From positions 150,201-214,200 of the IMG/VR virus record IMGVR_UViG_3300032931_001151: a DNA stretch of 64,000 nt; one strand, given 5' to 3'. The position numbers and the translations under genes are program-made. Position 1 is the first letter of the stretch. Every line of letters begins with the position of its first letter. Positions 3,561-63,885 of the stretch are shown piece after piece. Under the pieces are notes generated by a model. That model saw only the letters and a list, made by a program, of their open reading frames with translations, did not search any database and was not told where the DNA came from.

Positions 3561-4052
3561 CTATTTTACATTATTTATAGTAATCGTTCCATAATGACCG
3601 ATACAAATTGAATCGGCTTTTCCGTCGTGTGGAACTTTACATCTTGCCGATTTTAATAAGTTCATAGTCGGGTATGTATCTTTTACGAAATCTATTGCTC
3701 CACTTTTCTCGTCGTGTATGTATTTTTCACCCAATACATTCTTTTTCCATTTTTGTGGAGATATTTCCTTATATTCTATCCCAAGACACTCACATACCCC
3801 CTTAACCACTCCAACTCCTTCTCCGAAATTCCAAATGGACGTTCTTCCCTGGCCGGCAAATGCATGAACATGTTCCAAGTATACTAATTCAACTTTATTG
3901 GTTTTTAGATAATTAGATAGTTCTTTACCGTTTATTTTATTTTTTCCGTTTTCCTTTTCTTCTATTGGCATAATGATACAATCAATAAGATTTGTATCAT
4001 TAAAGATAGAAATTCCACCACTAAAACCAGGATCAATCCCGCATATAATCAT
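3561..4052 (-). CDS. RuvC-like Holliday junction resolvase
   Basis: ICGIDPGFSGGI; YLEHV; FGEGVG; ISPQKWKK; DGKADSICI catalytic motifs. Confidence 0.85.
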   Translation of the reverse strand: MIICGIDPGFSGGISIFNDTNLIDCIIMPIEEKENGKNKINGKELSNYLKTNKVELVYLEHVHAFAGQGRTSIWNFGEGVGVVKGVCECLGIEYKEISPQKWKKNVLGEKYIHDEKSGAIDFVKDTYPTMNLLKSARCKVPHDGKADSICIGHYGTITINNVK

Positions 4053-4118: not shown

Positions 4119-5075
4119 TTATAGTCCTATATTGGTTCCAATATTAGTTAAACCAATTCCACCTTTGCTCCCGCTTCTATCACCCTCTTCTGCACTCTTT
4201 TTTGCAGTTTCTTCTAATTCTTTTTTCATCATTTCTTCATATGCATTGGATAAGTTACCCATTAATTCGCCACTATTCTCATTATACTCACCTTCGCCAA
4301 CATATCCATATGATTCATCAATAGCGGGATTTCCACGACTCGTGCAAGCATCTTCGTAAACTGAATGAATCTCTTCCATTGAATTTCCGCACATTTCGCC
4401 CAATGATTGTAGTGCGGCACCACGATCTCCATTTTCATGTAGACCATTTGATTTTATGTGATTATATAATTCGTTCTTTTCCATTATACGTGATTCTTGT
4501 TTTGGCATCATTTCGGGTTCCAATTCGGCAGGCCCCCCACAACCTTGGGCAGATTCTACTGAATTCATTTCCATAGTCTCATATATTTTTCTCAAGTCGC
4601 TAACACTATCTTCAAATCTTTCACGGTGTATTTCAACTCCCTCGATATGCTCAACAATCATTTCCGTTGGATTTACTATCATTTTTCTTAGACCACAACG
4701 AAGTCCAAATTTAGCAGAATCTTCGTTTAATTTAATTGATTCAATAATCCACTCACGATTCTTTATATTATTAATACAAACCGTATCACCAACTTTAAAT
4801 TCATTATACGATTCTGCTATTGAGTCGCCGTTTCCAGTCATTGAGCCTCCAAATTTTTTCCCGGTAGATCCTTTTACGCTATGTTTTCCTTTTGCTTTCT
4901 CGTCATCTTCGTCGTCTTCGTCATCTTCATTTCGCAAATTATTACCTTTTAATATTTCCGAATCTTTTACCATATCGTCCTTATCACCTTTTAGTAAAGG
5001 ATCTTGAGTAAAAGGGATAGGACCCTTTTTTACTCCGGCTACTAAATATTCACCTTCTTTAAGTTCTGTTTCCAT
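4119..5075 (-). CDS. Acidic hypothetical protein (late operon)
   Basis: Long ORF with SD, directly downstream of 5086..6933. Confidence 0.65.
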   Translation of the reverse strand: METELKEGEYLVAGVKKGPIPFTQDPLLKGDKDDMVKDSEILKGNNLRNEDDEDDEDDEKAKGKHSVKGSTGKKFGGSMTGNGDSIAESYNEFKVGDTVCINNIKNREWIIESIKLNEDSAKFGLRCGLRKMIVNPTEMIVEHIEGVEIHRERFEDSVSDLRKIYETMEMNSVESAQGCGGPAELEPEMMPKQESRIMEKNELYNHIKSNGLHENGDRGAALQSLGEMCGNSMEEIHSVYEDACTSRGNPAIDESYGYVGEGEYNENSGELMGNLSNAYEEMMKKELEETAKKSAEEGDRSGSKGGIGLTNIGTNIGL

Positions 5076-5085
5076 ATATTATCCT

Positions 5086-6933
5086 TTAGGGCTGTACATT
5101 TGAATTGGGTAGGGTGTCTTCTATTGGGGAAATTTCAACATTCGGATTAGGTGCATCTTCGTATGCTATTCCGAATCCCTTTCCGCCGATTCTTTCTTCT
5201 GGGTCAAATGATTTATTTTTTTGTTCGGCGGGAGTTCCGCCTTTTGGCAATTGTATGGCACCGGATTTGTTAAAATTCTTTAAACTACTCGGAGTTCTTT
5301 TTGGGGGAGCAAGAGTTGCTTCCGGATCAAAATTTTCTATACCTTTTTGTTTTGCTTTAAATTTAGTAGGATCAAACATTCTATCTACTTGCAAAAGAGG
5401 AGCAGATTCGCCAATGCTCTTTTCTATCTTTTCCCATTCTTTTCTTAAATTGTCAGTACCACGTTCATAATGGTCTTCCATTTCGTCAAATCCTTGCCTA
5501 TCTGATAATTCTATATTTTCCATATTAGTTTCGGCGGTTTCGCCGTTATCAGACTCAAGCAATACCGTATCGCCTTGTATCTCCATTATAACCCAATGTT
5601 CGTTCTCAAATATTACATCTTGTCCTTGTTTATAATTTCCTAGTGGAATATCTTCAATTTCTCCAGGTTCTTCTTTTTCATCTTCAAATCCTGGATCTCC
5701 GAAATATGCACCTGGGGAATGTTGCGTGAAATTATTATTTGTGTTAAATGCCAACTCAGATTCTTCCGATGGTGGAATTGATGTTTCTGGAGTAAGTAAC
5801 TCGGGATCTATTCTGTCAATATTAGACTCGGTAACGGTTGGATTTTCCATATCTCTAGTGTCTACTTGAGAGTCGCCCATTTCTTTAGTAGACGTGCTTA
5901 TTGATTGATCTTTTTGGACATTTACTTCATCATGGGTAACTAATTCTGCATCTTCTTTCATGTTAATTCCACATTCTTGTAACATATTGCACGCCTCGTC
6001 GCATACGGTTTGCATGTCTTGCTTCATAGAAGTGATATCGCCATGTCCAATATTAGCATTAAGTTGTTCAGAGATAGTATCTACCGCTCTTCTAATATCG
6101 GGAGCACTATAATGTGCATTTACTTCATTTTGTAAATAATCATTAAGATTAGATTGTATATCATTTATAGCAGACTTTAATTTTTCAAGTATTTGAGCCT
6201 CTTGCTCTTCATGATCATGTCCTTCATCGGACCCATATTGTCTTTCTTGTTCTTCCGCATTATTAAGTAGATTTAAGGCATTTTTAAGACCTTCTACGTT
6301 ATTTTTGAGGGTAGCAAGGGCTAAATGCTCTATTTTTTCGGCGGCAGGAGCATTTTGATCAACCATGCCCATTGGATCCATCGCTTGAGAGCCATCTTCG
6401 GCATCAAACGTTTCGCTTGGGGTTTTTATTTCTATATCACTACCGACTCCAATTTCATCCTCATCATCATCATTTCCCACCATCATATTATTTTCTTGCT
6501 CTTCTTCTTCTTCTTCGGGATAATCAAAATCGGCATCATTTGGATTCTGTATATTATGGAATTCTATTAATTTTTCTATGCCTTCCATAATTGCAGAAAA
6601 GTCATACTCTTCTCTTAACCCGGCTTTATAATCCATATATAATTCGGTGGCAATGCTACTTAATCTTTCAATAAAGTCTTTAGTATATTCTGGACCGTCA
6701 TTAATATAGCCCTCTTTTATTTCACCAATAGCCGATGAAATAATAGCATCATTAAGATTTGATCTCATTCTCTTGATTATAGTTTCACAAAATAATCTAT
6801 AGTTTGGGGATGTATATGCTTCGTTGGTTACTTCTGAGAATTCGGAGCCGCAATCGTTACAAACATATTCTTCACTCAACATAGTTGGTGTGAATTCATT
6901 TGTATTTCCGCAGCAAGGACATTTTTTATCCAT
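5086..6933 (-). CDS. Acidic late protein with N-terminal Zn-ribbon (CPCC...CNDC)
   Basis: AGGGGAG SD; TATAAATA at 6975-6982 (-); many L/I/V-x-E sites. Confidence 0.65.
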   Translation of the reverse strand: MDKKCPCCGNTNEFTPTMLSEEYVCNDCGSEFSEVTNEAYTSPNYRLFCETIIKRMRSNLNDAIISSAIGEIKEGYINDGPEYTKDFIERLSSIATELYMDYKAGLREEYDFSAIMEGIEKLIEFHNIQNPNDADFDYPEEEEEEQENNMMVGNDDDEDEIGVGSDIEIKTPSETFDAEDGSQAMDPMGMVDQNAPAAEKIEHLALATLKNNVEGLKNALNLLNNAEEQERQYGSDEGHDHEEQEAQILEKLKSAINDIQSNLNDYLQNEVNAHYSAPDIRRAVDTISEQLNANIGHGDITSMKQDMQTVCDEACNMLQECGINMKEDAELVTHDEVNVQKDQSISTSTKEMGDSQVDTRDMENPTVTESNIDRIDPELLTPETSIPPSEESELAFNTNNNFTQHSPGAYFGDPGFEDEKEEPGEIEDIPLGNYKQGQDVIFENEHWVIMEIQGDTVLLESDNGETAETNMENIELSDRQGFDEMEDHYERGTDNLRKEWEKIEKSIGESAPLLQVDRMFDPTKFKAKQKGIENFDPEATLAPPKRTPSSLKNFNKSGAIQLPKGGTPAEQKNKSFDPEERIGGKGFGIAYEDAPNPNVEISPIEDTLPNSNVQP

Positions 6934-10528: not shown

Positions 10529-12353
10529 TAGTAAAAAAAGGATAGATATTATATATCAAGGAAGAAAGATAGTAATTCCAATTGGCGGATTTATTGAAGG
10601 ACCGCCACATTTAAAATTATATAAGGGACTTGAATTATGTATAGATGCTACTAATAAGGTAGCACTCAACTCCTCCAAAAAAATAGAGTCAACTTTAGAT
10701 ATAAACCAAGAGAATATAAACAACATAAATAAAACAATTCAATATATTAGCGATTATACGACTCTACCATCTATATCTATTTGTATATTAACAAAGAATA
10801 AATTACATTTTATCTCCGATTGCATAAATTCTATTCTTGATAAAGTTAAATATCCTAATACAAAAATATTGTTATTTGATACTGGAACAACCGAGCAAGA
10901 AGTTTTAAATTATTATAAAACACTTTCTAATACAAGAATACCTATTATTATTCATAATATAGGAAAATATCATTTTTCAACAAATTACAACGATGGAATA
11001 TTTAAATGCGTTGATACTGATTATTGTCTAATTCAAAATAATGATACTATTGCGTTGAATGATTACGTTAGTAAATTAATGAAAATTTCTATTATTGAAA
11101 AAGTGGGTGCTTGTGGACCTAGAATGTTATATAAAAATGGCACTATACAACACGACGGTCAATATATGTTTAACCATCAAGTAGGATCCGGATTTGTTAA
11201 TCCAGGCCATTTAGGAATGGGAAAATTACCATCTGAAGTTGGAGGAGGTAGACATCTAGTTGATGGCATAACTGCGGCAGGTCAACTTGTTAGAACTAAA
11301 TTATTTAAGAAATTAGGAGGATTTAATACTAATTTTAAAGACATCTATCAAGATGTCCATTTTAATATGACATTAAGAGGGAATGGATATATTTCTATTT
11401 GTGATAGAGATGCGGTAATTAATCACTATGACAATTCTTCTCGTAAAGATTCGTTTCATATACAGGAAGAAGTTGCAAAGATGTGGAAAGATAGTAACTA
11501 TCTATTCCATGAATTAATCCCTCGTGATGGCACATTACGGAATTTTAAAAGAAAAACGCCAATATTTAGCATTATTACATTAGTAAACGATAAAAAACAA
11601 TATATTGATTTTCTAGAAGATCTAAAAAATCAAAAATTTAATGGAATATTTGAAGTAATAGCCTTGCCAAATTTTAATGACGAATATAAAAGTGCAGCGG
11701 AAGCACTTAATGTTGGTAAAGATATAGCAGAAGGTGACTATGTAATGTATTGTCATCAAGATTTAAAAGTTCCATGTGATTGGCTTCTAAAAATATCAAA
11801 TAATATAAACTCATTAAATATGAAATCTATTGGGTTTCTTGGAATGGCTGGAGTTCTTTACAAAGAAGAAAATAATAAAAAGCAAGATGCTGCCATATTT
11901 CTTTCTAATTTAAATAGCAATAAACAAAAATTGTCGGATTACTATATGAAATTAGTGGGAGACAAACTTGAAGTTCAATGTTTAGACGAATTATGTATTA
12001 TAGGGTCTAGATCTGACCGCTATAGATTTGATGAGATTAATTTTGATCACTATCATTGGTATGGAGCCGACATATGCTTACAAGCATTGGTAGATAGTAG
12101 AAAGAATTATGCCATTAATGCCGAATGCTATCATTTATCCAATGGAGTATCCAATTTCAATAGAAGTGGGCATAGTGAAAAATATATAGAAGGTTCAAAA
12201 AAACTATATATTAAGTGGACACCTAAAATAAGTGAATTTAGAACAACTACCGCAACGTTCATTAAATCTACGAAAACTATTAAATTTTTAGTATATAAAG
12301 TATTACCAAATGAATTAAAAAAGAATTTTATTGAAACAATCTTAATGACTTGA
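10509..12353 (+). CDS. Two-domain GT-A/GT2 glycosyltransferase
   Basis: SICILTKN; NND; QDVHFN; second domain SAAEALNVG...CHQD...CLDELC..YGADICLQ. Confidence 0.85.
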   Translation: MPKFQNNSKKRIDIIYQGRKIVIPIGGFIEGPPHLKLYKGLELCIDATNKVALNSSKKIESTLDINQENINNINKTIQYISDYTTLPSISICILTKNKLHFISDCINSILDKVKYPNTKILLFDTGTTEQEVLNYYKTLSNTRIPIIIHNIGKYHFSTNYNDGIFKCVDTDYCLIQNNDTIALNDYVSKLMKISIIEKVGACGPRMLYKNGTIQHDGQYMFNHQVGSGFVNPGHLGMGKLPSEVGGGRHLVDGITAAGQLVRTKLFKKLGGFNTNFKDIYQDVHFNMTLRGNGYISICDRDAVINHYDNSSRKDSFHIQEEVAKMWKDSNYLFHELIPRDGTLRNFKRKTPIFSIITLVNDKKQYIDFLEDLKNQKFNGIFEVIALPNFNDEYKSAAEALNVGKDIAEGDYVMYCHQDLKVPCDWLLKISNNINSLNMKSIGFLGMAGVLYKEENNKKQDAAIFLSNLNSNKQKLSDYYMKLVGDKLEVQCLDELCIIGSRSDRYRFDEINFDHYHWYGADICLQALVDSRKNYAINAECYHLSNGVSNFNRSGHSEKYIEGSKKLYIKWTPKISEFRTTTATFIKSTKTIKFLVYKVLPNELKKNFIETILMT

Positions 12354-58072: not shown

Positions 58073-58150
58073 GGGCAAAAGTCTAGCTGGTATGCTAGTA
58101 AACGTCTGATAAGCGTTTTTAGGTGAGTTCGATTCTCACTTTGCCCACCA
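58073..58150 (+). tRNA. tRNA-Ile(GAT)
   Basis: GGGCAAA/TTTGCCC; CT-GAT-AA; TTCGATT; CCA. Confidence 0.85.
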
Positions 58151-58218
58151 TTCCCTTTAATAGAGTTGGAGTTGAAACTATTTTAGCTGAGGTTAAGCTA
58201 ATTAAAACCTCAAGTCAT

Positions 58219-58294
58219 CAGGCCGTAGTGTTTAACAGTAGCATGGCTCGTTTGGGGCGAGGTGGAGGGAGTGCAAATCTCCCCGGCTTGACCA
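58219..58294 (+). tRNA. tRNA-Pro(TGG)
   Basis: CAGGCCG/CGGCTTG; TT-TGG-GG; CCA. Confidence 0.85.
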
Positions 58295-58309
58295 TTTTTA
58301 GTAATTCAT

Positions 58310-58383
58310 ACCGATGTAGCATAAGTAGCAAATGCGAAAGATTGTCGATCTTTAGATAGTGGGTGCAAGTCCCATCATCGGTG
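58310..58383 (+). tRNA. tRNA-Asp(GTC), CCA not encoded
   Basis: ACCGATG/CATCGGT; AAAGA-TTGTCGA-TCTTT. Confidence 0.85.
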
Positions 58384-58444
58384 CTTTTATTAACAATAGA
58401 ATTAATATATGATATAATGTACTTTCACTATTAGAAAGGATTAT

Positions 58445-58714
58445 ATGAAAGATTCAAAATATGGCATATTTCAAGAATATATAAGATGCTATAGAGATAT
58501 ACTCATTTATATAAAAAAGTATGAACATGATAGCGATGAAATCACTAAGGATAGATTTGAAAGTAAAAGGTTAAAATTAATAGATATGGAAGAAAACGAA
58601 TCGTTTATTGTTAATATTCTATCTATATTAGAAATGCCTAGCACACAAGATATTTGTATTACGAGTAGTTTCCCAAGTAATATTTTGAAATGCACTACAT
58701 ATAATAAAAATTAA
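58445..58714 (+). CDS. Hypothetical protein in the tRNA array
   Basis: AAAGGA SD. Confidence 0.55.
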   Translation: MKDSKYGIFQEYIRCYRDILIYIKKYEHDSDEITKDRFESKRLKLIDMEENESFIVNILSILEMPSTQDICITSSFPSNILKCTTYNKN

Positions 58715-58730
58715 TTTATATAGAATTTAT

Positions 58731-58805
58731 GCCGGGGTCGTATATGAGGTAATACGCAAGTCTGAAGAACTTGATCAACGGATTCGAGCGCCGTCCCCGG
58801 CACCA
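58731..58805 (+). tRNA. tRNA-Phe(GAA)
   Basis: GCCGGGG/CCCCGGC; CT-GAA-GA; CCA. Confidence 0.85.
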
Positions 58806-58850
58806 TTTACATAGGGTTACAACTCCCATAGTTAAAAGTTGAAACTTTGT

Positions 58851-58927
58851 GGGTTGCAAGCATAAATGGAAGGATGCCATCGATTCTTAATCGATAGAGT
58901 AGGGTTCGAATCCCTAGCGACCCACCA
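58851..58927 (+). tRNA. tRNA-Lys(CTT)
   Basis: GGGTTGC/GCGACCC; TT-CTT-AA; TTCGAAT; CCA. Confidence 0.9.
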
Positions 58928-58930
58928 CAT

Positions 58931-59019
58931 GGATTAGGCAATTGCAGGAGATGCAACATTGTTTGGAAAACAATTGGGGCCTTTACGGGCCTTTGGAGCG
59001 TAACCAAGCTAATCCGCCA
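58931..59019 (+). tRNA. tRNA-Ser(GGA), atypical D- and T-arms
   Basis: GGATTAG/CTAATCC; ATTGT-TTGGAAA-ACAAT; long variable arm; G73; CCA. Confidence 0.75.
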
Positions 59020-59024
59020 TTTTT

Positions 59025-59114
59025 GGAAATACGGGAACATAGTTGTTCAAATAGTTTCGAAAACTATCCTTGGTCTTAATTGGCCTAACCGTGCGATTCG
59101 GTGTATTTCCTCCA
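59025..59114 (+). tRNA. tRNA-Ser(CGA), 8/4 acceptor/T-stem fold
   Basis: GGAAATAC/GTATTTCC 8 bp; ACCG/CGGT T-stem; TT-CGA-AA; CCA. Confidence 0.75.
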
Positions 59115-59148
59115 ACTTCGTGATATAATAAATAGTACGAGAGGCAAT

Positions 59149-59937
59149 ATGAATATAACAATTGATCACGATAACGATGGTTTTGGCGCACAAATGATGG
59201 GTATTATATCTGCTATAGCATATGCAAAATTTCATGAACATACTTATTATCACACACCAAGAAAAAATATAAAATTGGTTGGGATAGAAGAACCTCAGAA
59301 TGCGGAGATTGATAAAATTAATGAGTTTTTAAACACATTTATGAAAAATTTGGGAATAAATTTAATGCCATCTGAAATTTTACTTGACGGAGAGGGTAAA
59401 CCAAAATTTACATGTGAAGTTAGGCCACATTTTCATGACGAAATATATTACAACGGATCAAACTATTATACGAAAGAATTTAATACATATCTAAGACAAA
59501 ATTATCCACTTACTAAACCTAACTATTATGAAAATATGCATAATATAGCAATTCACATTAGAAGGGGATCTGATATAGATTCACCATCGCAACGGCATAA
59601 TAGATGGATTGATTCAAACGTTTATAATTGTCTTATAGACTTAATACACGTAAAATATCCAAATAGTATTATACATGTATTTTCTTGGGGTGATCCAGAA
59701 ATAGAGATAAAACCGTTCATAGTATTTCATTCATCAAATAGTGGTTCAACATTTTTAGATGACTATAATGCATTAGTTTGGGCCGACATATTGGTAGTGG
59801 GGTCAAGTACTTTTAGTCTTTCTGCCGCTCTTATAAACAATAATAAAATAATAATTGATGGGGCATTTTATAAATTAAATGGTATGTACATACCAAATGA
59901 ATGGATGCAAAATTTTAAAGAATTTTATGTAATGTGA
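59149..59937 (+). CDS. GT11-like (alpha-1,2-fucosyl/colitosyl-transferase-like) glycosyltransferase
   Basis: DGFGAQ; IAIHIRRGSD; ADIL..G.STFS; true start after the tRNA-Ser(CGA). Confidence 0.75.
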   Translation: MNITIDHDNDGFGAQMMGIISAIAYAKFHEHTYYHTPRKNIKLVGIEEPQNAEIDKINEFLNTFMKNLGINLMPSEILLDGEGKPKFTCEVRPHFHDEIYYNGSNYYTKEFNTYLRQNYPLTKPNYYENMHNIAIHIRRGSDIDSPSQRHNRWIDSNVYNCLIDLIHVKYPNSIIHVFSWGDPEIEIKPFIVFHSSNSGSTFLDDYNALVWADILVVGSSTFSLSAALINNNKIIIDGAFYKLNGMYIPNEWMQNFKEFYVM

Positions 59938-59986
59938 AATATTATAGAATAAAGAATTATTCTAAAGATTATGAAAAAATTAAAAT

Positions 59987-60078
59987 GGATCGGTGAGTGA
60001 GCGGTCAAAACTAGAAATTTACTAAATTTCCGATCCCAGAAATGGGGTCCGTAGGTTCGAATCCTACCCGATCCGCCA
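59987..60078 (+). tRNA. tRNA-Ser(ACT)
   Basis: GGATCGG/CCGATCC; GAAAT-TTACTAA-ATTTC; long variable arm; G73; CCA. Confidence 0.85.
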
Positions 60079-60081
60079 TAT

Positions 60082-60174
60082 GGAGAGAACAACCGAGAAT
60101 AGTTTTCGGCACTGATTTGAAATCAGAGGGTTCCGTGCAAACGGGATAAGGTGCGATACCTTGGCTCTCCACCA
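60082..60174 (+). tRNA. tRNA-Ser(TGA), extended D-stem
   Basis: GGAGAG/CTCTCC; CTGA-TTTGAAA-TCAG; long variable arm; CCA. Confidence 0.75.
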
Positions 60175-60176
60175 TC

Positions 60177-60204
60177 TTGACAATATATTAAAATATGCTA
60201 TAAT
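60177..60204 (+). promoter_or_regulatory. Sigma70 promoter with extended -10 directly upstream of the suppressor tRNA
   Basis: TTGACA-16 nt-TATAAT with TG extension. Confidence 0.75.
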
Positions 60205-60214
60205 GAACTCACAT

Positions 60215-60286
60215 GGGTCATTGACCGAGTGGCACAGGTGATGGGTTCTAAACCCATTTAGAAGTGTTCAAATCACTTATGACTCA
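60215..60286 (+). tRNA. Amber suppressor tRNA (anticodon CTA)
   Basis: GGGTCAT/ATGACTC; ATGGG-TT-CTA-AA-CCCAT; AAGTG-TTCAAAT-CACTT; A73; followed by CAA, not CCA. Confidence 0.8.
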
Positions 60287-60319
60287 CAATTATAAATAAA
60301 CACTAGCAAAGGAGCTAAT

Positions 60320-60430
60320 ATGATTGCTTAGAAGAAATTAGAATATGGGTAGGTAGGTTGTCGTGGACCTCCTATTTGTTATTGGTTGAATAATCTCAAA
60401 TTAACACCAATAACAAGGAATATAATATGA
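60320..60430 (+). promoter_or_regulatory. Leader ORF with two in-frame UAG codons, coupled to the downstream gene
   Basis: AAAGGAG SD; MIA*KKLEYG*VGCRGPPICYWLNNLKLTPITRNII-TGA; TGA overlaps ATG 60427; hairpin 60376-60416 abuts and covers the downstream SD. Confidence 0.7.
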
Positions 60431-60855
60431 ATAAAAAAGAATTGATTGCTAAGATTAAAGAAGAAATTAAAGTCACTTCCGAGATCCTTAGAATAAATAA
60501 AAAGACTCACAAACAAAACCAAAGAATGTATTCACAAGGCACAAGACCTTTTGAGTTAATTCAACTTTATCCGTTTGATGTGGAAAAGGTAACACCTTTT
60601 AATCATAATTATGTAAAAGTAATTGATGGAAAACATTATTGGAACTATAGTTACAACGAAACTCCATGCAATGCGGGCATTGAGTCGGCAAAGTGCCACT
60701 TGACTTGTCTACATATTGTGTATAATATGCTTCGTACAAAAAAGACGCATTGCCACAACATTGAAAGGAATGATTATTATGTTAAATATTTTGATAAGCT
60801 CATACAAGGATATCTTAGCCAAGTGGAAGAGGAACAAAATGTTGTCGTATCCTGA
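60427..60855 (+). CDS. Hypothetical protein preceding the PTH2-like gene
   Basis: AAGGA SD; LHIVYNMLR motif. Confidence 0.65.
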   Translation: MNKKELIAKIKEEIKVTSEILRINKKTHKQNQRMYSQGTRPFELIQLYPFDVEKVTPFNHNYVKVIDGKHYWNYSYNETPCNAGIESAKCHLTCLHIVYNMLRTKKTHCHNIERNDYYVKYFDKLIQGYLSQVEEEQNVVVS

Positions 60856-61210
60856 ACCACCATCTTTAGAAGAAGCACTAAAACAAGTTAGAATGTATGT
60901 TTTAGTAAGAAGGGAAATTTTACCTTTAGTCCATTGTGTTTGTCAATGTACACATGCGGTAGCCGAATTTATTCATTATCATCAAAATGATAATACTAAA
61001 TTATGGGTTACATGTGAAAAAACTTTAATTGTTTTAGAAGCGACGGAAGACCAAATAAAAGAAAAAATGATTTGGTTTGCTGACCGTCATATGAATTATC
61101 AACCTTTTTGTGAACCGGATATGAATAATGTTCTAACGGCGGTTGCGTTTCAACCAATTACAAAACAAATTGGTAATGAAGTTTTTGGTAACTTAAAGCT
61201 TCTAAAATAA
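60839..61210 (+). CDS. Peptidyl-tRNA hydrolase, PTH2-like phage family
   Basis: YVLVRR; Q..HAVAEF; W.....LIVL; F.EPDM...LTAVA. Confidence 0.7.
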   Translation: MLSYPEPPSLEEALKQVRMYVLVRREILPLVHCVCQCTHAVAEFIHYHQNDNTKLWVTCEKTLIVLEATEDQIKEKMIWFADRHMNYQPFCEPDMNNVLTAVAFQPITKQIGNEVFGNLKLLK

Positions 61211-61223
61211 TATTTAAAAATGA

Positions 61224-61262
61224 CCCGTCCAAGTATAAATAAGTTTATAACACTTGGACGGG
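61224..61262 (+). promoter_or_regulatory. 11-bp hairpin enclosing a late promoter and sequestering the SD of the endonuclease gene
   Basis: CCCGTCCAAGT...ACTTGGACGGG; TATAAATA 61234-61241; ATG 61271. Confidence 0.8.
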
Positions 61263-61270
61263 ACACTATT

Positions 61271-61897
61271 ATGAATGAAAATGTACTTAGAAAAGATAAA
61301 CAAAAATTACATCTTATTAAAAAATTAAGATGTATTATGGATCATGGCGGAAAATGTAAACATTGTGGAAAGGATTTAATAATAAACCACTACGATGCAG
61401 ATTTTCATCATATAGACCCTTCGATTAAAGAAGTTGTGGGGCATTCTTTAATGAATGGGCATTATTACAAAATAAAAAAAGAAGTTGATAAGTGTATTTT
61501 ATTATGTGGATCGTGTCATAGGTATGAACATTGTAAATGGAAAGATTGGATTAATCACAAAGAAGAATTACTTTCTTTAGCAAAAAATATTCATAATAGG
61601 AGAACCATAGAAGATACACAACAACGTATTAAAAAAATTAAAGAATTATATTTAAGCGGTAATGGTATAAGACAAATAGCAAAAATATTAGGAATACCTG
61701 TATCCTCTGTTGGATATACAATTAAGAAATTGGGTATAGGTAGACCATTTATTACTAAAGTGTCTAATGAAGAATTGATAGAATGTTTTAAGCAAGGAAT
61801 GACAGCAAGTGAGGTTTCAAAAAAATATAATTGTTGTTATGCAAACTGTTGTAGAAAACATAAAAAATGGAGAAATAAAAAAAGTAAGCTGCTATAG
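61271..61897 (+). CDS. HNH-type homing endonuclease with C-terminal HTH domains
   Basis: CKHCG; DFHHID; CILLCGSCHRYEH; GIRQIAKILG. Confidence 0.8.
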   Translation: MNENVLRKDKQKLHLIKKLRCIMDHGGKCKHCGKDLIINHYDADFHHIDPSIKEVVGHSLMNGHYYKIKKEVDKCILLCGSCHRYEHCKWKDWINHKEELLSLAKNIHNRRTIEDTQQRIKKIKELYLSGNGIRQIAKILGIPVSSVGYTIKKLGIGRPFITKVSNEELIECFKQGMTASEVSKKYNCCYANCCRKHKKWRNKKSKLL

Positions 61898-61961
61898 TAT
61901 AATGGTATTATGCGATCTTGGTATGATTGAGACGGAAGTTCGATTCTTCCTGGCAGCACCA
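61888..61961 (+). tRNA. tRNA-Thr(GGT)
   Basis: GCTGCTA/TGGCAGC; TT-GGT-AT; CCA; overlaps the endonuclease stop. Confidence 0.85.
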
Positions 61962-62027
61962 TTCAAGTTACACTTTTTTCTAAGAGTTTTGTGTTTCCAA
62001 GCAAGCAAACGAAAAAACTTAGTGCAT

Positions 62028-62101
62028 ACAGTAATAGTATAACGGAATTATTTTCCACTCCAAACGGAAAGATCGTGGTCCGACTCCACGTTACTGTGCC
62101 A
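62028..62101 (+). tRNA. tRNA-Trp(CCA)
   Basis: ACAGTAA/TTACTGT; CT-CCA-AA; CCA end. Confidence 0.75.
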
Positions 62102-62106
62102 ATCAT

Positions 62107-62182
62107 ATCCGTTTAGCTCATTAGGAAGAGTTTCTTGGTCCTAACAAGAAGGTAGTAGGTTCGAATCCTACAACGGATGCCA
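62107..62182 (+). tRNA. tRNA-Arg(CCT)
   Basis: ATCCGTT/AACGGAT; GT-CCT-AA; CCA. Confidence 0.85.
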
Positions 62183-62193
62183 AAATTTAGTAT

Positions 62194-62267
62194 ACCCGGT
62201 TCATCTAATGGAAGGATATAAAACTACGAATTTTATCATTTAGGTTCGAATCCTAAGCCGGGTGCCA
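62194..62267 (+). tRNA. tRNA-Arg(ACG)
   Basis: ACCCGGT/GCCGGGT; CT-ACG-AA; CCA. Confidence 0.9.
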
Positions 62268-62270
62268 TTT

Positions 62271-62393
62271 CTCTAGATGCATTAAAGGATTACACCAAAC
62301 AGTGGATTGTAGGTTCAACTCCTACCAAGTGAAAGCTTGTAGCTTAATTGGCAAAGCAACCGTCAAAAACATCTTTTAAACTTTTTGCTAGAG
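62271..62393 (+). ncRNA. Circularly permuted tRNA-like RNA (T-arm, loop-closed acceptor stem, D-arm); Y-RNA/YrlA-like architecture
   Basis: GTAGG-TTCAACT-CCTAC; CAAGT-GAAA-GCTTG; TA-GCTT-AATTGGCA-AAGC. Confidence 0.65.
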
Positions 62394-62405
62394 AATCTTT
62401 TTCAT

Positions 62406-62495
62406 GCGGATGTGTTGGAATTGGCAGACATCATAGTTTTAGACACTATGGCGAAATTAAGTAGCGTGCAGGTTCAACTCCTGTCGTCCGCACCA
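62406..62495 (+). tRNA. tRNA-Leu(TAG)
   Basis: GCGGATG/CGTCCGC; TT-TAG-AC; long variable arm; CCA. Confidence 0.9.
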
Positions 62496-62499
62496 AATT

Positions 62500-62636
62500 G
62501 TTGTCGTGTAGCTCAGTGGTTAGAGCGAATTTTTGAGGAAACGAGAAATTGTTTCTAGGTCGCAAATAGTGACCGTTCAAAATTGTGCGGGTAAAAATGT
62601 CTTTAGTGACATGGTTCGATTCCCCCTACGACAACA
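62500..62636 (+). ncRNA. tRNA-like RNA with a branched insert replacing the anticodon loop
   Basis: GTTGTCGT/ACGACAAC; canonical D-arm GCTCAGTGGTTAGAGC; TTCGATT T-loop; no 7-nt anticodon loop. Confidence 0.6.
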
Positions 62637-62646
62637 TCTTTTTCAA

Positions 62647-62732
62647 GCGTCTATGGAGAAATAGAAGACTCGTGAGACTAAGAATCTCATTCCGTAAATG
62701 GAGTACAAGTGCAAGTCTTGTTAGGCGCACCA
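62647..62732 (+). tRNA. tRNA-Leu(AAG)
   Basis: GCGTCTA/TAGGCGC; TGAGA-CTAAGAA-TCTCA; CCA. Confidence 0.85.
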
Positions 62733-62747
62733 TTTTGTAAAATCCAC

Positions 62748-62835
62748 GGGGGCGTGGTGAAATAGAAAACACACAACGCTTAAAACGTTGCGGATAGAAA
62801 TATCCTTGCAGGTGCAAGTCCTGTCGCCCCTACCA
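62748..62835 (+). tRNA. tRNA-Leu(TAA)
   Basis: GGGGGCG/CGCCCCT; CT-TAA-AA; CCA. Confidence 0.9.
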
Positions 62836-62840
62836 ATTAC

Positions 62841-62914
62841 GCCGATTTAGTATAGTGACATTACAATTGATTCGTATCCAATAAACGATGGTTTAATTCC
62901 ATCAATCGGCACCA
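62841..62914 (+). tRNA. tRNA-Thr(CGT)
   Basis: GCCGATT/AATCGGC; TT-CGT-AT; T-loop TTTAATT; CCA. Confidence 0.75.
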
Positions 62915-62915
62915 G

Positions 62916-63344
62916 TTATTCGTGAAATAGTTTCTTTACTTTATTCGTAAGTTCAACATTTTCTACTAATTTAGGAATGACCATTCCAAATTCTCTACCT
63001 TTAGTTTTAATATAAGGAAATGCAATCATAAGAATATCGAGTAACTCTCTATATTTTCTAAAGTTTTCTATAAATTGTTTTTTATCTTTTATCTCTTTTA
63101 TGTTGTTTAAATTGGACAATAAAGAAATAAAACAAACTAAATCATCGTTATTCTTAAAGTGATCTAATGATATATTGGTAGAGTTGGTTAAATCGTCGTC
63201 AATTTGTGATTTTGAGGGTACTAATGGTTCTATTTTTTTAGGAGTTGGTCTTGACTTCCATTTATCAAAAAAACCTTCAATTAATTGTAAATCTTCTGTT
63301 AAACTTGATAAATCTTCATTTAATTCTTGTTGTTCTAATGGCAT
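62916..63344 (-). CDS. Late hypothetical protein (MPLEQQELNE...)
   Basis: AGGGGAG SD; TATAAATA 63364-63371 (-). Confidence 0.65.
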   Translation of the reverse strand: MPLEQQELNEDLSSLTEDLQLIEGFFDKWKSRPTPKKIEPLVPSKSQIDDDLTNSTNISLDHFKNNDDLVCFISLLSNLNNIKEIKDKKQFIENFRKYRELLDILMIAFPYIKTKGREFGMVIPKLVENVELTNKVKKLFHE

Positions 63345-63408
63345 AATGACTCCCCTATTGACATATTTATAATGAGGACTATAATAAATATAAGAAAAGG
63401 GGTATAAA

Positions 63409-63639
63409 ATGAGTACTCTAGAACTCTTAAATAATGAAGACCTAGATTGCCTAGATGGTATGCTCATCTTTGGCATGAATGGGGATATTAATCGGTATAA
63501 CGTGTGTAAACTTAAGGTTGATGAATATTTAGTGGAAGAAGCCATTAAGGAATATGGATTAAAAGATGCTTTAAAAGAAAAAGTAATTACCCAAAAAGAG
63601 GCTAACGAGTATCTTGAAAAGCATAAGTTTGTTGCATAA
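63409..63639 (+). CDS. Hypothetical protein
   Basis: AAGGGG SD. Confidence 0.55.
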   Translation: MSTLELLNNEDLDCLDGMLIFGMNGDINRYNVCKLKVDEYLVEEAIKEYGLKDALKEKVITQKEANEYLEKHKFVA

Positions 63640-63640
63640 T

Positions 63641-63714
63641 GGGCGTTTAGTTTAATGGAAAAACATCTCTTTTACACGGAGAATTCGGGGGTTCGATTCC
63701 CTCAATGCCTACCA
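63641..63714 (+). tRNA. tRNA-Val(TAC)
   Basis: GGGCGTT/AATGCCT; TT-TAC-AC; CCA. Confidence 0.9.
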
Positions 63715-63718
63715 ATAT

Positions 63719-63804
63719 GCGGAGTGAAGTCCAATGGCCGGACATCAGATTGTGGCTCTGAGTGCGAAAGCACATTGCGGGTTCGAATCCCGTCACTTCG
63801 CCCA
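63719..63804 (+). tRNA. tRNA-His(GTG) with long variable arm
   Basis: G-1:C73; TCAGA-TTGTGGC-TCTGA; GTGC-GAAA-GCAC extra arm; CCA. Confidence 0.85.
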
Positions 63805-63809
63805 TTTAC

Positions 63810-63885
63810 GGTGGATTAGTTATTCGGCAATAACAGTAGTATCATAAACTACACAAAAAGGGTTCGACTCCCTTATCCACTACCA
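63810..63885 (+). tRNA. tRNA-Met or Ile2 (CAT)
   Basis: GGTGGAT/ATCCACT; AT-CAT-AA; CCA. Confidence 0.8.

What the first reader, a model, noticed from the sequence alone, without database searches (positions are those of the whole stretch)
62500..62636. Anticodon-less tRNA-like RNA with branched inserts
Seen: an acceptor stem extendable to 9 bp, a textbook D-arm, and an anticodon stem (AATTTTTGA/TCAAAATT) capped by two hairpins (GAAAC/GTTTC, GGTCGC/GTGACC) instead of a loop. The T-stem (GGG+GG/CCCCC) is interrupted by an ATGTC/GACAT hairpin, and there is no CCA. It is too short for tmRNA or a group I intron. Inference: a stable tRNA-derived ncRNA or decoy.
Basis: partly seen in the sequence, partly recalled or inferred. 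Interest (0 to 1): 0.6.

Follow-up and report, generated by a model that had tools for sequence, protein, structure and literature searches.

The report
Expanded tRNA-like RNA in phage tRNA array
A 137-base gene inside a jumbo phage's tRNA array keeps the core of a tRNA but has extra hairpins where the anticodon loop should be; compensatory mutations in related phages show it is a selected structured RNA of unknown role, not a decoding tRNA or a dead gene.

Summary
The terminal stem is 9 bp, extendable to 10. There is a D arm with G18 G19. A long stem replaces the anticodon stem and carries two hairpins. The T stem (GGG+GG/CCCCC) is split by UAAAA plus a 5-bp hairpin. There is no CCA.

It is not chance and not decay. 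I found four other versions: a close relative (L008, L025, L027), two more distant viral contigs (L028, L029), and a microbial-mat strain (run X1). They keep every helix through compensatory changes: 12 pairs changed on both sides, 97.7% of cells paired, 0 of 500 shuffles as good.

The best-conserved parts are a 6-bp hairpin with loop AAAUA, the string GCGGGUAAAA, and the T loop.

Removing the inserts gives no consistent anticodon loop in any version. No BHB motif, ribozyme core, ligase or splicing endonuclease was found. A spliced normal tRNA is therefore unlikely.

It matches no Rfam family and no prokaryotic genome searched.

The best reading is a tRNA-scaffolded non-coding RNA cut out of the array transcript, acting by tRNA mimicry. 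Expression and partner are untested. The closest analogue is T4 species 1 RNA (rnaC).

The parts
62500..62508 (+). 5' strand of the terminal (acceptor-like) stem. It is 9 bp: the inner 7 match a tRNA acceptor stem, and the outer 2 pair the would-be leader with positions 73-74.
   Evidence: Six of the 9 pairs change on both sides across homologues, including both outer pairs.
62509..62526 (+). U8-A9 equivalents (TA) and the D arm GCTC/AGTGGTTA/GAGC, with G18 G19.
   Evidence: GUAG..UCAG.GG..AGA.C is invariant in 4 versions. The second D-stem pair is C-G only in the window. It is U.U in L008, X1 and X3, and C.U in L028 and L029.
62528..62536 (+). 5' strand of stem X, the extended stem that takes the place of the anticodon stem.
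   Evidence: Compensatory changes: U-A to C-G at two pairs in X1 and one in L008. L008 has tandem G.A where the window has U-A plus a bulged U.
62537..62556 (+). HP1: an 8-bp hairpin capped by a GNRA tetraloop (GAAA, 62545-62548). It is absent in the distant homologues L028 and L029.
   Evidence: One A-U to G-C compensation in L008. The loop is GUAA in runs X1 and X3, so GNRA is kept. It is deleted in L028 and L029.
62558..62574 (+). HP2: a 6-bp hairpin with invariant loop AAAUA and closing C-G pair. It can also be read as a 5-bp stem with 7-nt loop CAAAUAG. It is the most conserved element of the family.
   Evidence: The stem changes from GGUCGC/GUGACC to GACUGC/GCGGUC: 2 pairs change on both sides and 2 on one side. 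The loop is unchanged.
62577..62584 (+). 3' strand of stem X.
62585..62591 (+). Variable-loop equivalent GTGC (its C matches C48 of a G15-C48 Levitt pair) and the first three G of the T stem.
   Evidence: GCGGG is invariant.
62592..62612 (+). Insert in the T stem: the invariant linker UAAAA plus HP3, a hairpin of 5-8 bp.
   Evidence: HP3 has a different sequence but stays a hairpin in every version. Window: AUGUC/GACAU. L008: CGGGC/GCUCG. X1: UACAC/GUGUA (joined by me from two contig ends). L029 and L028: 8 bp with loops UUAU and UUCG.
62613..62626 (+). Distal T stem (GG/CC), the canonical T loop TTCGATT, and the 3' strand CCC of the proximal T stem.
   Evidence: GGUUCGA.UCCCCCU is invariant, so this stem has no covariation for or against it. 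RNAalifold pairs GGG with a different three of the five C.
62627..62636 (+). 3' strand of the terminal stem plus one A. No CCA follows.
62406..62495 (+). Upstream tRNA-Leu(UAG), ending in CCA 4 nt before the element.
   Evidence: No + strand promoter-like or terminator-like site was found in 61800-63000, which fits co-transcription.
62647..62732 (+). Downstream tRNA-Leu(AAG), starting 10 nt after the element.

Best explanation
It is a phage-specific structured non-coding RNA built on a tRNA scaffold. It keeps the parts of a tRNA that make the L-shaped core and elbow: U8, A14, G15-C48, G18 G19, the T loop UUCGA, and the stacked acceptor and T helices. This is shown by the sequence and its conservation.

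Inferred steps. It is transcribed with the tRNA array and cut out by the tRNA-processing machinery. The tRNA-like fold and the fully paired ends would make it stable. It cannot decode. The anticodon loop is replaced by a 4-9 bp helix carrying a conserved hairpin (loop AAAUA) and, in some lineages, a GNRA hairpin. It is probably not charged as made, because the 3' end is paired and no CCA is encoded.

The conserved HP2 loop and the UAAAA-plus-hairpin insert in the T stem are the likely working surfaces. The most likely mode of action is tRNA mimicry. The RNA would bind a host or phage protein that normally handles tRNA. It would act either as a competitor or decoy, or as an adaptor in the way tRNA-like Y RNAs work. 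Which protein, and to what end, is not known.
For: Five versions of the RNA keep the same architecture.
- Window.
- L008:10538-10671, identical to the copies in L025 and L027.
- L028:1735-1849.
- L029:258-372.
- Run X1, read from contig differences and loose ends.

On the 4-sequence alignment, 97.7% of cells pair, against 88.2% in shuffles. Twelve pairs change on both sides. None of 500 shuffles reaches this, and slid controls give 0-2 such pairs. RNAalifold independently recovers the 9-bp terminal stem and HP2, with 8 covarying pairs.

Between the window and L008, the HP1+HP2 insert is nearly identical while the tRNA body has diverged much more. This is the reverse of what a discarded intron would show.

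The core tRNA tertiary positions and the T loop are invariant.

The gene sits in the array 4 nt after one tRNA and 10 nt before the next. No promoter-like or terminator-like site lies between on its strand.

The outer two pairs of the terminal stem both switch compensatorily in L008: G-C and U-A become A-U and C-G. The stem can extend to 10-11 bp in the window, L008 and L029.

Phage tRNA arrays hold other non-tRNA RNAs. There is a YrlA-like RNA 100 nt upstream. The relative has an abiF motif and an RNase P RNA. T4 has rnaC and rnaD.
Against: There is no expression data. None of 24 public runs holding the locus is RNA. Excision, stability and the ends of the RNA are therefore all inferred.

Only five versions from one phage clade are known. 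The covariation is clear but shallow, and the T stem and HP1 are almost invariant.

The X1 version was read by hand from contig differences and loose ends. Three or four of its differences were not listed.

No partner protein was found. Few of the array's ORFs are shared with the related arrays.

The phage encodes a PolyA_pol-family, CCA-adding-like enzyme. CCA could therefore be added after trimming, and a chargeable end cannot be excluded.
Confidence: 0.55

Rival explanations
1. It is a real tRNA gene with two short introns, one in the anticodon loop and one in the T stem. Both are removed to give a decoding tRNA, for example Leu(GAG) in the window. This would resemble the 'enigmatic introns' reported in Lak megaphage tRNAs.
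For: The window and X1 have UUGAGG after the 5-bp stem AAUUU or AAUCC, and an A before its partner strand. This could give the loop UUGAGGA, with anticodon GAG, G37 and discriminator A73. Short non-group-I inserts in phage tRNA anticodon loops do exist: Lak phages (PMC6784885), and L025:10695-10814, which scores 50 bits as tRNA and ends in CCA. The phage has a CCA-adding-like enzyme.
Against: L008 has GA at positions 32-33, so no U33. L028 and L029 lack that segment altogether. No removal scheme gives a consistent 7-nt loop across versions (worked out by hand). L027 carries a normal class II tRNA-Leu(GAG) as well. The inserts are more conserved than the exons. I found no BHB geometry by inspection. 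There is no group I or ribozyme hit at E up to 10. The phage has no RtcB, Rnl-type ligase or splicing endonuclease. The paired leader and trailer covary.
Confidence: 0.1
2. It is a Y-RNA-like adaptor. Together with the YrlA-like RNA 100 nt upstream, it would bind the host Ro60/Rsr ring and redirect an exoribonuclease such as PNPase.
For: A YrlA-like RNA lies at 62270-62397. It matches the full Rfam model at 35.4 bits, E 3.8e-6, and shows compensatory changes in X1. Bacteria usually carry two Y RNAs side by side, and a second one can hold a T arm (PMC4201824).
Against: The candidate does not match the YrlA model. Its topology is not permuted. I could not find the GNCGAAN0-1G motif in it or in the upstream RNA. 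The phage has no TROVE protein. The upstream hit is well below the gathering score of 69. Two adjacent tRNAs can imitate YrlA at about 30 bits. I found no YrlA-like RNA next to the L027 copy.
Confidence: 0.08
3. The conserved insert is a small catalytic or ligand-binding RNA, such as a self-cleaving or self-splicing element or an aptamer, that uses the tRNA body only as a carrier.
For: There is strong sequence conservation of the HP1, junction and HP2 region, and a GNRA tetraloop is kept (GAAA and GUAA). The junction begins UUGAGGA, which resembles the hammerhead CUGANGA box.
Against: No Rfam ribozyme or riboswitch family matches at E up to 10. The hammerhead GAA element between helices II and III is replaced by CUA. 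HP1 and the UUGAGG string are absent from L028 and L029, which keep the rest.
Confidence: 0.07
4. It is a decaying tRNA pseudogene that has picked up junk insertions.
For: It scores below the Rfam tRNA threshold, has no CCA, and is not called by ARAGORN.
Against: Five diverged versions keep all helices by compensatory change and keep the loops unchanged.
Confidence: 0.02

Closest known systems
Phage T4 species 1 RNA (rnaC, 139 nt) and species 2 RNA (rnaD, 119 nt)
   Same: They are annotated as small stable RNAs, sit in the tRNA cluster on the tRNA strand, and abut a tRNA. The sizes are similar: 139 and 119 nt against 137, 134 and 115 nt here. rnaC has a canonical T arm (CCGGG/UUCGAAU/CCCGG) with a hairpin directly 5' of it and a long arm in the middle. 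No CCA is encoded. To my knowledge, no function has been assigned to either T4 RNA.
   Different: It is not homologous by the covariance model (8.7 bits). rnaC shows no clear D arm and no 9-bp terminal stem. The HP2 loop and the GCGGGUAAAA string are absent.
YrlA / bacterial Y RNAs (Rfam RF02553)
   Same: They are non-coding RNAs that mimic tRNA with a D arm, T arm and acceptor-like stem. They are not used in decoding, are handled by tRNA enzymes, and are also found in phages (PMC4201824). A YrlA-like RNA lies next to the candidate.
   Different: YrlA is circularly permuted, with its ends in the anticodon stem and its acceptor stem closed by a loop. It carries the Rsr-binding GNCGAAN0-1G motif. 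The candidate has normal tRNA topology, lacks that motif, and there is no Ro60 gene in the phage.
Phage tRNAs with short 'enigmatic' introns (Lak megaphages)
   Same: They are oversized tRNA-like genes in the tRNA sets of large phages, with inserts too short for group I introns and highly conserved insert sequences (PMC6784885). Similar genes occur in L025, L004, L006, L005 and L002.
   Different: Those genes keep a recognisable anticodon and, in the cases I looked at, a normal T stem; L025, L006 and L002 also end in CCA. The candidate has no consistent anticodon, a second insert in the T stem, a 9-11 bp terminal stem and no CCA.
allo-tRNAs with 8/4 or 9/3 acceptor/T branches (PMC5389517)
   Same: They have a 9-bp acceptor stem and an extra arm, and are suggested in part to be regulatory non-coding RNAs (abstract shown).
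   Different: allo-tRNAs keep a 12-bp branch and a normal anticodon arm. Here the branch is 9+5 bp with a hairpin inserted in the T stem, and there is no anticodon loop.

Membership tests
tRNA (Rfam RF00005) | Score at or above the gathering threshold of 29 bits | tested here: not met
   It scores 24.0 bits at 62502-62634 with a 43-nt and a ~27-nt insert. It is not listed at the gathering threshold. ARAGORN does not call it, with or without introns. The L027 copy is not reported at E up to 0.1.
tRNA (Rfam RF00005) | D arm with G18 G19, T arm with UUCRA loop, U8, and acceptor and T helices | tested here: met
   These positions are invariant in all versions.
tRNA (Rfam RF00005) | 5-bp anticodon stem closed by a 7-nt loop with U33 and a purine at 37, at the standard distance from the elbow | tested here: not met
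   The stem continues into a branched or extended helix. Removing the hairpins gives no consistent loop across versions (by hand).
tRNA (Rfam RF00005) | Single-stranded NCCA 3' end, encoded or added | tested here: inconclusive
   CCA is not encoded in any version, and the two bases after the 7-bp stem are paired. The phage has a CCA-adding-like enzyme, so addition after trimming cannot be excluded.
Intron-containing tRNA (archaeal/eukaryal BHB type) | Bulge-helix-bulge motif at the exon-intron borders, and a splicing endonuclease | tested here: not met
   No arrangement of 3-nt bulge, 4 bp, 3-nt bulge can be drawn at either insert (by hand). There is no tRNA_int_endo in the phage. The relative's RNase P RNA is bacterial type A, so the host is taken to be bacterial.
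Group I intron in a tRNA | Intron of about 200 nt or more with the P1-P9 core | tested here: not met
   The inserts are about 40 nt and 21 nt. No Rfam intron hit at E up to 10.
tmRNA | tRNA-like domain with CCA, plus a tag reading frame and pseudoknots, about 260 nt or more | tested here: not met
   ARAGORN tmRNA search is negative. There is no Rfam hit. The RNA is 137 nt, has no CCA, and has a D stem.
YrlA / Y RNA (RF02553) | Permuted tRNA-like module, a terminal stem with GNCGAAN0-1G, and an adjacent Ro60/Rsr gene | tested here: not met
   There is no YrlA hit on 62500-62636. The 16.7-bit hit at 62467-62526 only clips the D arm. The topology is not permuted. I did not find the motif. There is no TROVE domain in the genome.
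T4 rnaC family | Sequence and structure homology to T4 species 1 RNA | tested here: not met
   Model R1 scores rnaC at 8.7 bits, E 0.41, below ordinary T4 tRNAs. The resemblance is of kind and context only.
Small self-cleaving ribozymes (hammerhead, twister, pistol, hatchet and others) | Match to the Rfam models and the conserved catalytic core | tested here: not met
   There is no hit at E up to 10 with permissive filters. The hammerhead G12 A13 A14 element is missing (by hand).
allo-tRNA (9/3 or 8/4) | 12-bp acceptor plus T branch made of a longer acceptor stem and a shorter T stem, with a normal anticodon arm | tested here: not met
   The acceptor is 9 bp, but the T stem is 3+2 bp around an insert, giving a 14-bp branch. 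There is no anticodon loop.

The most novel reading that the evidence does not exclude
This is the founding member of an undescribed class of phage effector RNAs. A tRNA body is used as a processing and stabilising scaffold, the natural counterpart of the laboratory 'tRNA scaffold'. It displays a conserved hairpin that neutralises or hijacks a host tRNA-directed factor. That factor could be a tRNA-cleaving defence nuclease, a tRNA-sensing abortive-infection system or a tRNA-modifying enzyme. Phage tRNA arrays would then be general 'RNA islands' that also deliver anti-defence RNAs. The abiF motif and RNase P RNA in the relative's array, and the YrlA-like RNA here, fit that idea.
Probability: 0.2. 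Interest if true: 0.8.

Novelty: new variant of a known kind. Interest (0 to 1): 0.55.

Why it matters
Large phages carry many tRNA genes, and annotation pipelines skip whatever in those arrays fails a tRNA model. This case shows that at least one such skipped gene is under clear structural selection. It keeps exactly the tRNA features that proteins and RNase P read, and it has lost the features needed for decoding.

It adds a tractable, sequence-defined relative to an old puzzle, the stable RNAs of the T4 tRNA cluster, for which I know of no assigned function. It also links that puzzle to tRNA-mimicking Y RNAs.

If the RNA turns out to bind a host tRNA-directed defence or processing factor, it would be a new kind of RNA-based takeover or counter-defence. 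The 9-bp stem, HP2 loop and T-stem insert would then be ready-made handles for pull-downs and structure work.

Tried and rejected
**Homologue searches that found nothing new**
- An exact 25-mer of the acceptor plus D arm in viral contigs gave nothing.
- The neighbouring 209-aa ORF has no relatives in viral contigs.
- blastn of the region against GenBank phages gave one weak tRNA-Leu hit only.
- The metagenome pattern scan found only the L008-type copy again.
- Two patterns against 185,579 prokaryotic genomes gave zero matches.
- Model R1 on five complete or partial related phage records gave nothing.
- The relaxed pattern GGGTAAAA...GGTTCRANTCCCC gave 18 new loci. None scored like the family with model R1, and those I inspected are ordinary tRNAs with that string in the D loop or variable arm.

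**Readings rejected**
- Spliced tRNA-Leu(GAG).
- BHB intron.
- Hammerhead: UUGAGGA resembles CUGANGA, but the GAA element is absent and the segment is missing in L028 and L029.
- 11-nt GNRA receptor at the T-stem junction: not conserved.
- HP2 as a working anticodon arm: A at position 33, and too far from the elbow.
- Rsr binding: no motif and no TROVE domain.

**Other checks that led nowhere**
- No specific tRNA ancestor could be named.
- Few of the array ORFs are shared with the related arrays (only two weak partial matches), so there is no candidate partner by co-occurrence.
- RNA evidence: no RNA run holds the locus, so expression could not be tested.
- TAG recoding: open frames already cover 92% of the genome under code 11, so I see no sign of recoding and used no other code.

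Full report
**Where it lies.** The window is the last 64 kb of a 214,200-bp IMG/VR virus record. The record has 32.8% G+C. Open frames already cover 92% of it under code 11, so I see no sign of stop-codon recoding. Its class II ribonucleotide reductase is under 50% identical to that of any isolated phage. Public runs holding parts of the region are lake, freshwater, pond, sediment and microbial-mat metagenomes. I take it to be an uncultivated freshwater jumbo phage.

All 18 tRNAs that ARAGORN finds in the record lie on the + strand at 58073-63885 of the window. The record ends inside this array. The finding sits between tRNA-Leu(UAG) (62406-62495) and tRNA-Leu(AAG) (62647-62732). It starts 4 nt after the first and ends 10 nt before the second. 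No promoter-like or terminator-like site lies on its strand in 61800-63000.

**The observation.**
- A 9-bp terminal stem, GUUGUCGUG/UACGACAAC. Its inner 7 bp, followed by UA, are in register with a tRNA acceptor stem and U8-A9.
- A D arm, GCUC/AGUGGUUA/GAGC.
- 'Stem X', where the anticodon stem would be: AAUUUUUGA/UCAAAAUU with one bulged U. It ends in two hairpins instead of a loop.
- HP1: 8 bp with loop GAAA.
- HP2: GGUCGC/AAAUA/GUGACC.
- A 4-nt variable stretch, GUGC.
- A T stem GGG+GG/CCCCC with T loop UUCGAUU. It is split after its third pair by UAAAA and the hairpin AUGUC/UUUAGU/GACAU (HP3).
- ACAUC after the stem, not CCA. The four neighbouring tRNAs visible all end in CCA.

The minimum-energy fold reproduces the terminal stem, D arm, HP1, HP2 and HP3. 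Its energy is -43.2 kcal/mol with z = -4.0. The Rfam tRNA model aligns end to end at 24 bits, under its threshold of 29. ARAGORN does not call the gene, even with introns allowed. No other Rfam family matches at E up to 10.

**Homologues.** A relative whose reductase is 79% identical (L008) has the same gene at 10538-10671, 78% identical. Two further contigs carry identical copies: L025 from a second sample and L027 from a 127-kb metagenome contig.

Pattern scans using the conserved T-arm region found two more distant members, L029:258-372 and L028:1735-1849. Each is 115 nt, with model R1 scores of 54 and 53 bits.

Contigs of a microbial-mat run (X1) laid on the window give a fifth version, and run X3 gives part of another. 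I read these by hand from listed differences and loose ends. Three or four X1 differences were not listed, and I joined the HP3 of X1 from two contig ends.

There is one copy in the window's own genome. Two patterns found none in 185,579 prokaryotic genomes. There is no match in five other related phage records.

**Structure is under selection.** Changes seen across the versions:
- Window against L008: terminal-stem pairs 1, 2, 6 and 8 change on both sides. This includes both 'extra' outer pairs, where G-C and U-A become A-U and C-G. One stem X pair and one HP1 pair also change on both sides. HP3 is wholly different in sequence but is again a 5-bp hairpin.
- X1: stem X becomes a perfect 9-bp helix through two U-A to C-G switches. 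HP3 is UACAC/CUAAA/GUGUA. The HP1 loop is GUAA, as in X3, so it is still GNRA.
- L028 and L029: the HP2 stem becomes GACUGC/GCGGUC around the unchanged loop AAAUA. HP3 is 8 bp with loop UUAU or UUCG. These two differ from each other by a C-G to U-A switch in the terminal stem.

On the four-sequence model alignment, 97.7% of cells pair, against 88.2% in shuffles. Twelve pairs change on both sides. None of 500 shuffles reaches this, and slid controls give 0-2 such pairs. That alignment was fitted to the model. However, RNAalifold on its own recovers the 9-bp stem and HP2, with 8 covarying pairs.

The T stem never varies, so it is neither supported nor contradicted. RNAalifold pairs GGG with a different three of the five C.

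Invariant strings are GUAG.UCAG.GG..AGA.C, GCAAAUAG, GCGGGUAAAA and GGUUCGA.UCCCCCU. These include the tRNA tertiary positions U8, A14, G15-C48, G18 G19 and the T loop.

One oddity: the second D-stem pair is C-G only in the window. It is U.U or C.U elsewhere.

The terminal stem can be extended to 10 bp (window) or 11 bp (L008, L029).

**Why it is not a tRNA awaiting splicing.**
- In the window and X1, removing everything between G37 and A38 equivalents would leave the loop UUGAGGA, with anticodon GAG.
- L008 has GA at positions 32-33, forming tandem G.A pairs that continue the helix.
- L028 and L029 lack that whole segment together with HP1.
- Removing HP2 there leaves ACUAAAA on a 4-bp stem. 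The same operation in the window leaves UGAGUUC.
- No scheme gives the same or a canonical loop in all versions.
- The L027 phage also has a normal class II tRNA-Leu(GAG).
- The HP1+HP2 insert is nearly identical between the window and L008 while the tRNA body has diverged much more.
- I could draw no bulge-helix-bulge motif at either insert.
- The inserts, about 40 and 21 nt, are far too short for group I introns.
- The junction string UUGAGGA resembles the hammerhead CUGANGA box, but the GAA element is replaced by CUA.
- The genome has no RtcB, no Rnl-type RNA ligase and no splicing endonuclease.
- HP2 read as 5 bp plus CAAAUAG has the size of an anticodon arm. It has A at position 33 and sits beyond an extra 4-9 bp helix, so it would be out of reach for decoding.

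**Most likely working.**
- Shown: a conserved L-shaped tRNA core with three expansions. These are a longer, fully paired terminal stem, a long and sometimes branched arm ending in the invariant AAAUA loop, and a hairpin on a UAAAA linker in the T stem.
- Inferred: it is made as part of the array transcript and released by the enzymes that release the flanking tRNAs. It is stable because it folds like a tRNA and has paired ends. It acts by being taken for a tRNA by some protein, either as a competitor or as an adaptor.

RNase P might cut at the 7-bp position. YrlA of M. smegmatis is cut by RNase P when its stem is 7 bp (PMC4201824). Against this, the covarying outer pairs argue that the longer helix matters. 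The phage's own PolyA_pol-family enzyme leaves open that CCA is added.

I put 0.55 on this overall reading. The specific decoy or anti-defence version gets about 0.2. The rivals and their weights are listed separately.

**Comparison with known systems.** The nearest known things are analogues, not relatives.
- T4 rnaC and rnaD are annotated small stable RNAs of 139 and 119 nt at the end of the T4 tRNA cluster. rnaC has a canonical T arm with a hairpin just 5' of it and a long central arm. It scores only 8.7 bits with my model.
- YrlA-type Y RNAs mimic tRNA but are permuted, and they carry an Rsr-binding motif that is absent here.
- Lak megaphage tRNAs have conserved short introns of unknown mechanism (PMC6784885). 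Oversized tRNA-like genes occur in other viral contigs too: L025:10695-10814, L004:8421-8521, L006:348-477, L005:6341-6486 and 6717-6843, and L002:2564-2701. Where I looked, those keep an anticodon and a normal T stem, and L025, L006 and L002 also end in CCA.

I therefore rate the finding as a new variant of a known kind: non-decoding tRNA-like RNAs carried in phage tRNA arrays. It is not in Rfam, and I found no description of it in the literature I could search.

**Limits.** There is no expression evidence. There are only five versions, all from one clade. One version was read by hand. No partner is known. All mechanistic steps beyond the fold are inference.

Noticed in passing
window 62270-62397 (+): A YrlA-like (Y RNA-like) permuted tRNA-like RNA fills the gap between tRNA-Arg(ACG) and tRNA-Leu(UAG). 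Its order is an 8-bp closing stem, a T arm, an acceptor-like hairpin capped by GAAA, then a D arm. It matches the full Rfam RF02553 model at 35.4 bits, E 3.8e-6, below the gathering score of 69. Run X1 shows compensatory changes in its T and D stems and a longer acceptor-like hairpin. [quoted passage not shown]
   Followed up: partly
window 63720-63804; L008:3522-3612, 3650-3740, 4990-5078: tRNAs of classes that normally have a short variable loop (His here; Lys twice and Asn in the relative) carry a long variable arm and are 85-91 nt long. An extra arm next to the T stem seems to be a habit of this phage lineage.
   Followed up: partly
L027:11767-12091 (+): The related phage's tRNA array contains a bacterial type A RNase P RNA, scoring 187 bits against a gathering score of 100. 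It starts 3 nt after tRNA-Leu(GAG). None was found in the window's own record, which ends inside the array. My searches found no paper on phage-encoded RNase P RNA.
   Followed up: partly
L027:6164-6200 (+): An abiF RNA motif (RF03085, 38.7 bits, gathering score 37) lies between tRNA-Pro and tRNA-Asp in the related phage's array. It may be a mimic of a host abortive-infection RNA.
   Followed up: no
L025:10695-10814 = L027:6869-6984 (+): A tRNA (50 bits, ending in CCA, loop starting CUUUG) has an insert of about 45 nt in the anticodon loop. The insert holds a T-arm-like hairpin, AUAUGG/UUCAACU/CCAUAG. It looks like the Lak-phage type of 'enigmatic intron'. L028:298-418 is a similar case.
   Followed up: partly
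window 60215-60287 (+): A tRNA with anticodon CUA, an amber suppressor, which ARAGORN labels Pyl. Open frames already cover 92% of the genome under code 11, so there is no sign of TAG recoding.
   Followed up: partly
window 60716-61210 (+): An ORF inside the tRNA array matches peptidyl-tRNA hydrolase PTH2 (PF01981, E 4.3e-7).
   Followed up: no
G000:C1:24369-24773 (-), outside the window: The phage encodes a PolyA_pol-family nucleotidyltransferase, CCA-adding-enzyme-like (81 bits, 399-aa open frame).
   Followed up: no
L027:1134-1343 (+): A 210-nt gap between tRNA-Arg(CCU) and tRNA-Met lies at the position syntenic to the window's YrlA-like RNA. It folds strongly (-58.5 kcal/mol) but matches no Rfam family.
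   Followed up: no
window 59987-60078 (+): A 92-nt tRNA-Ser with the unusual anticodon ACU. A tRNA-Ser(ACU) also occurs in L027:10573-10662.
   Followed up: no
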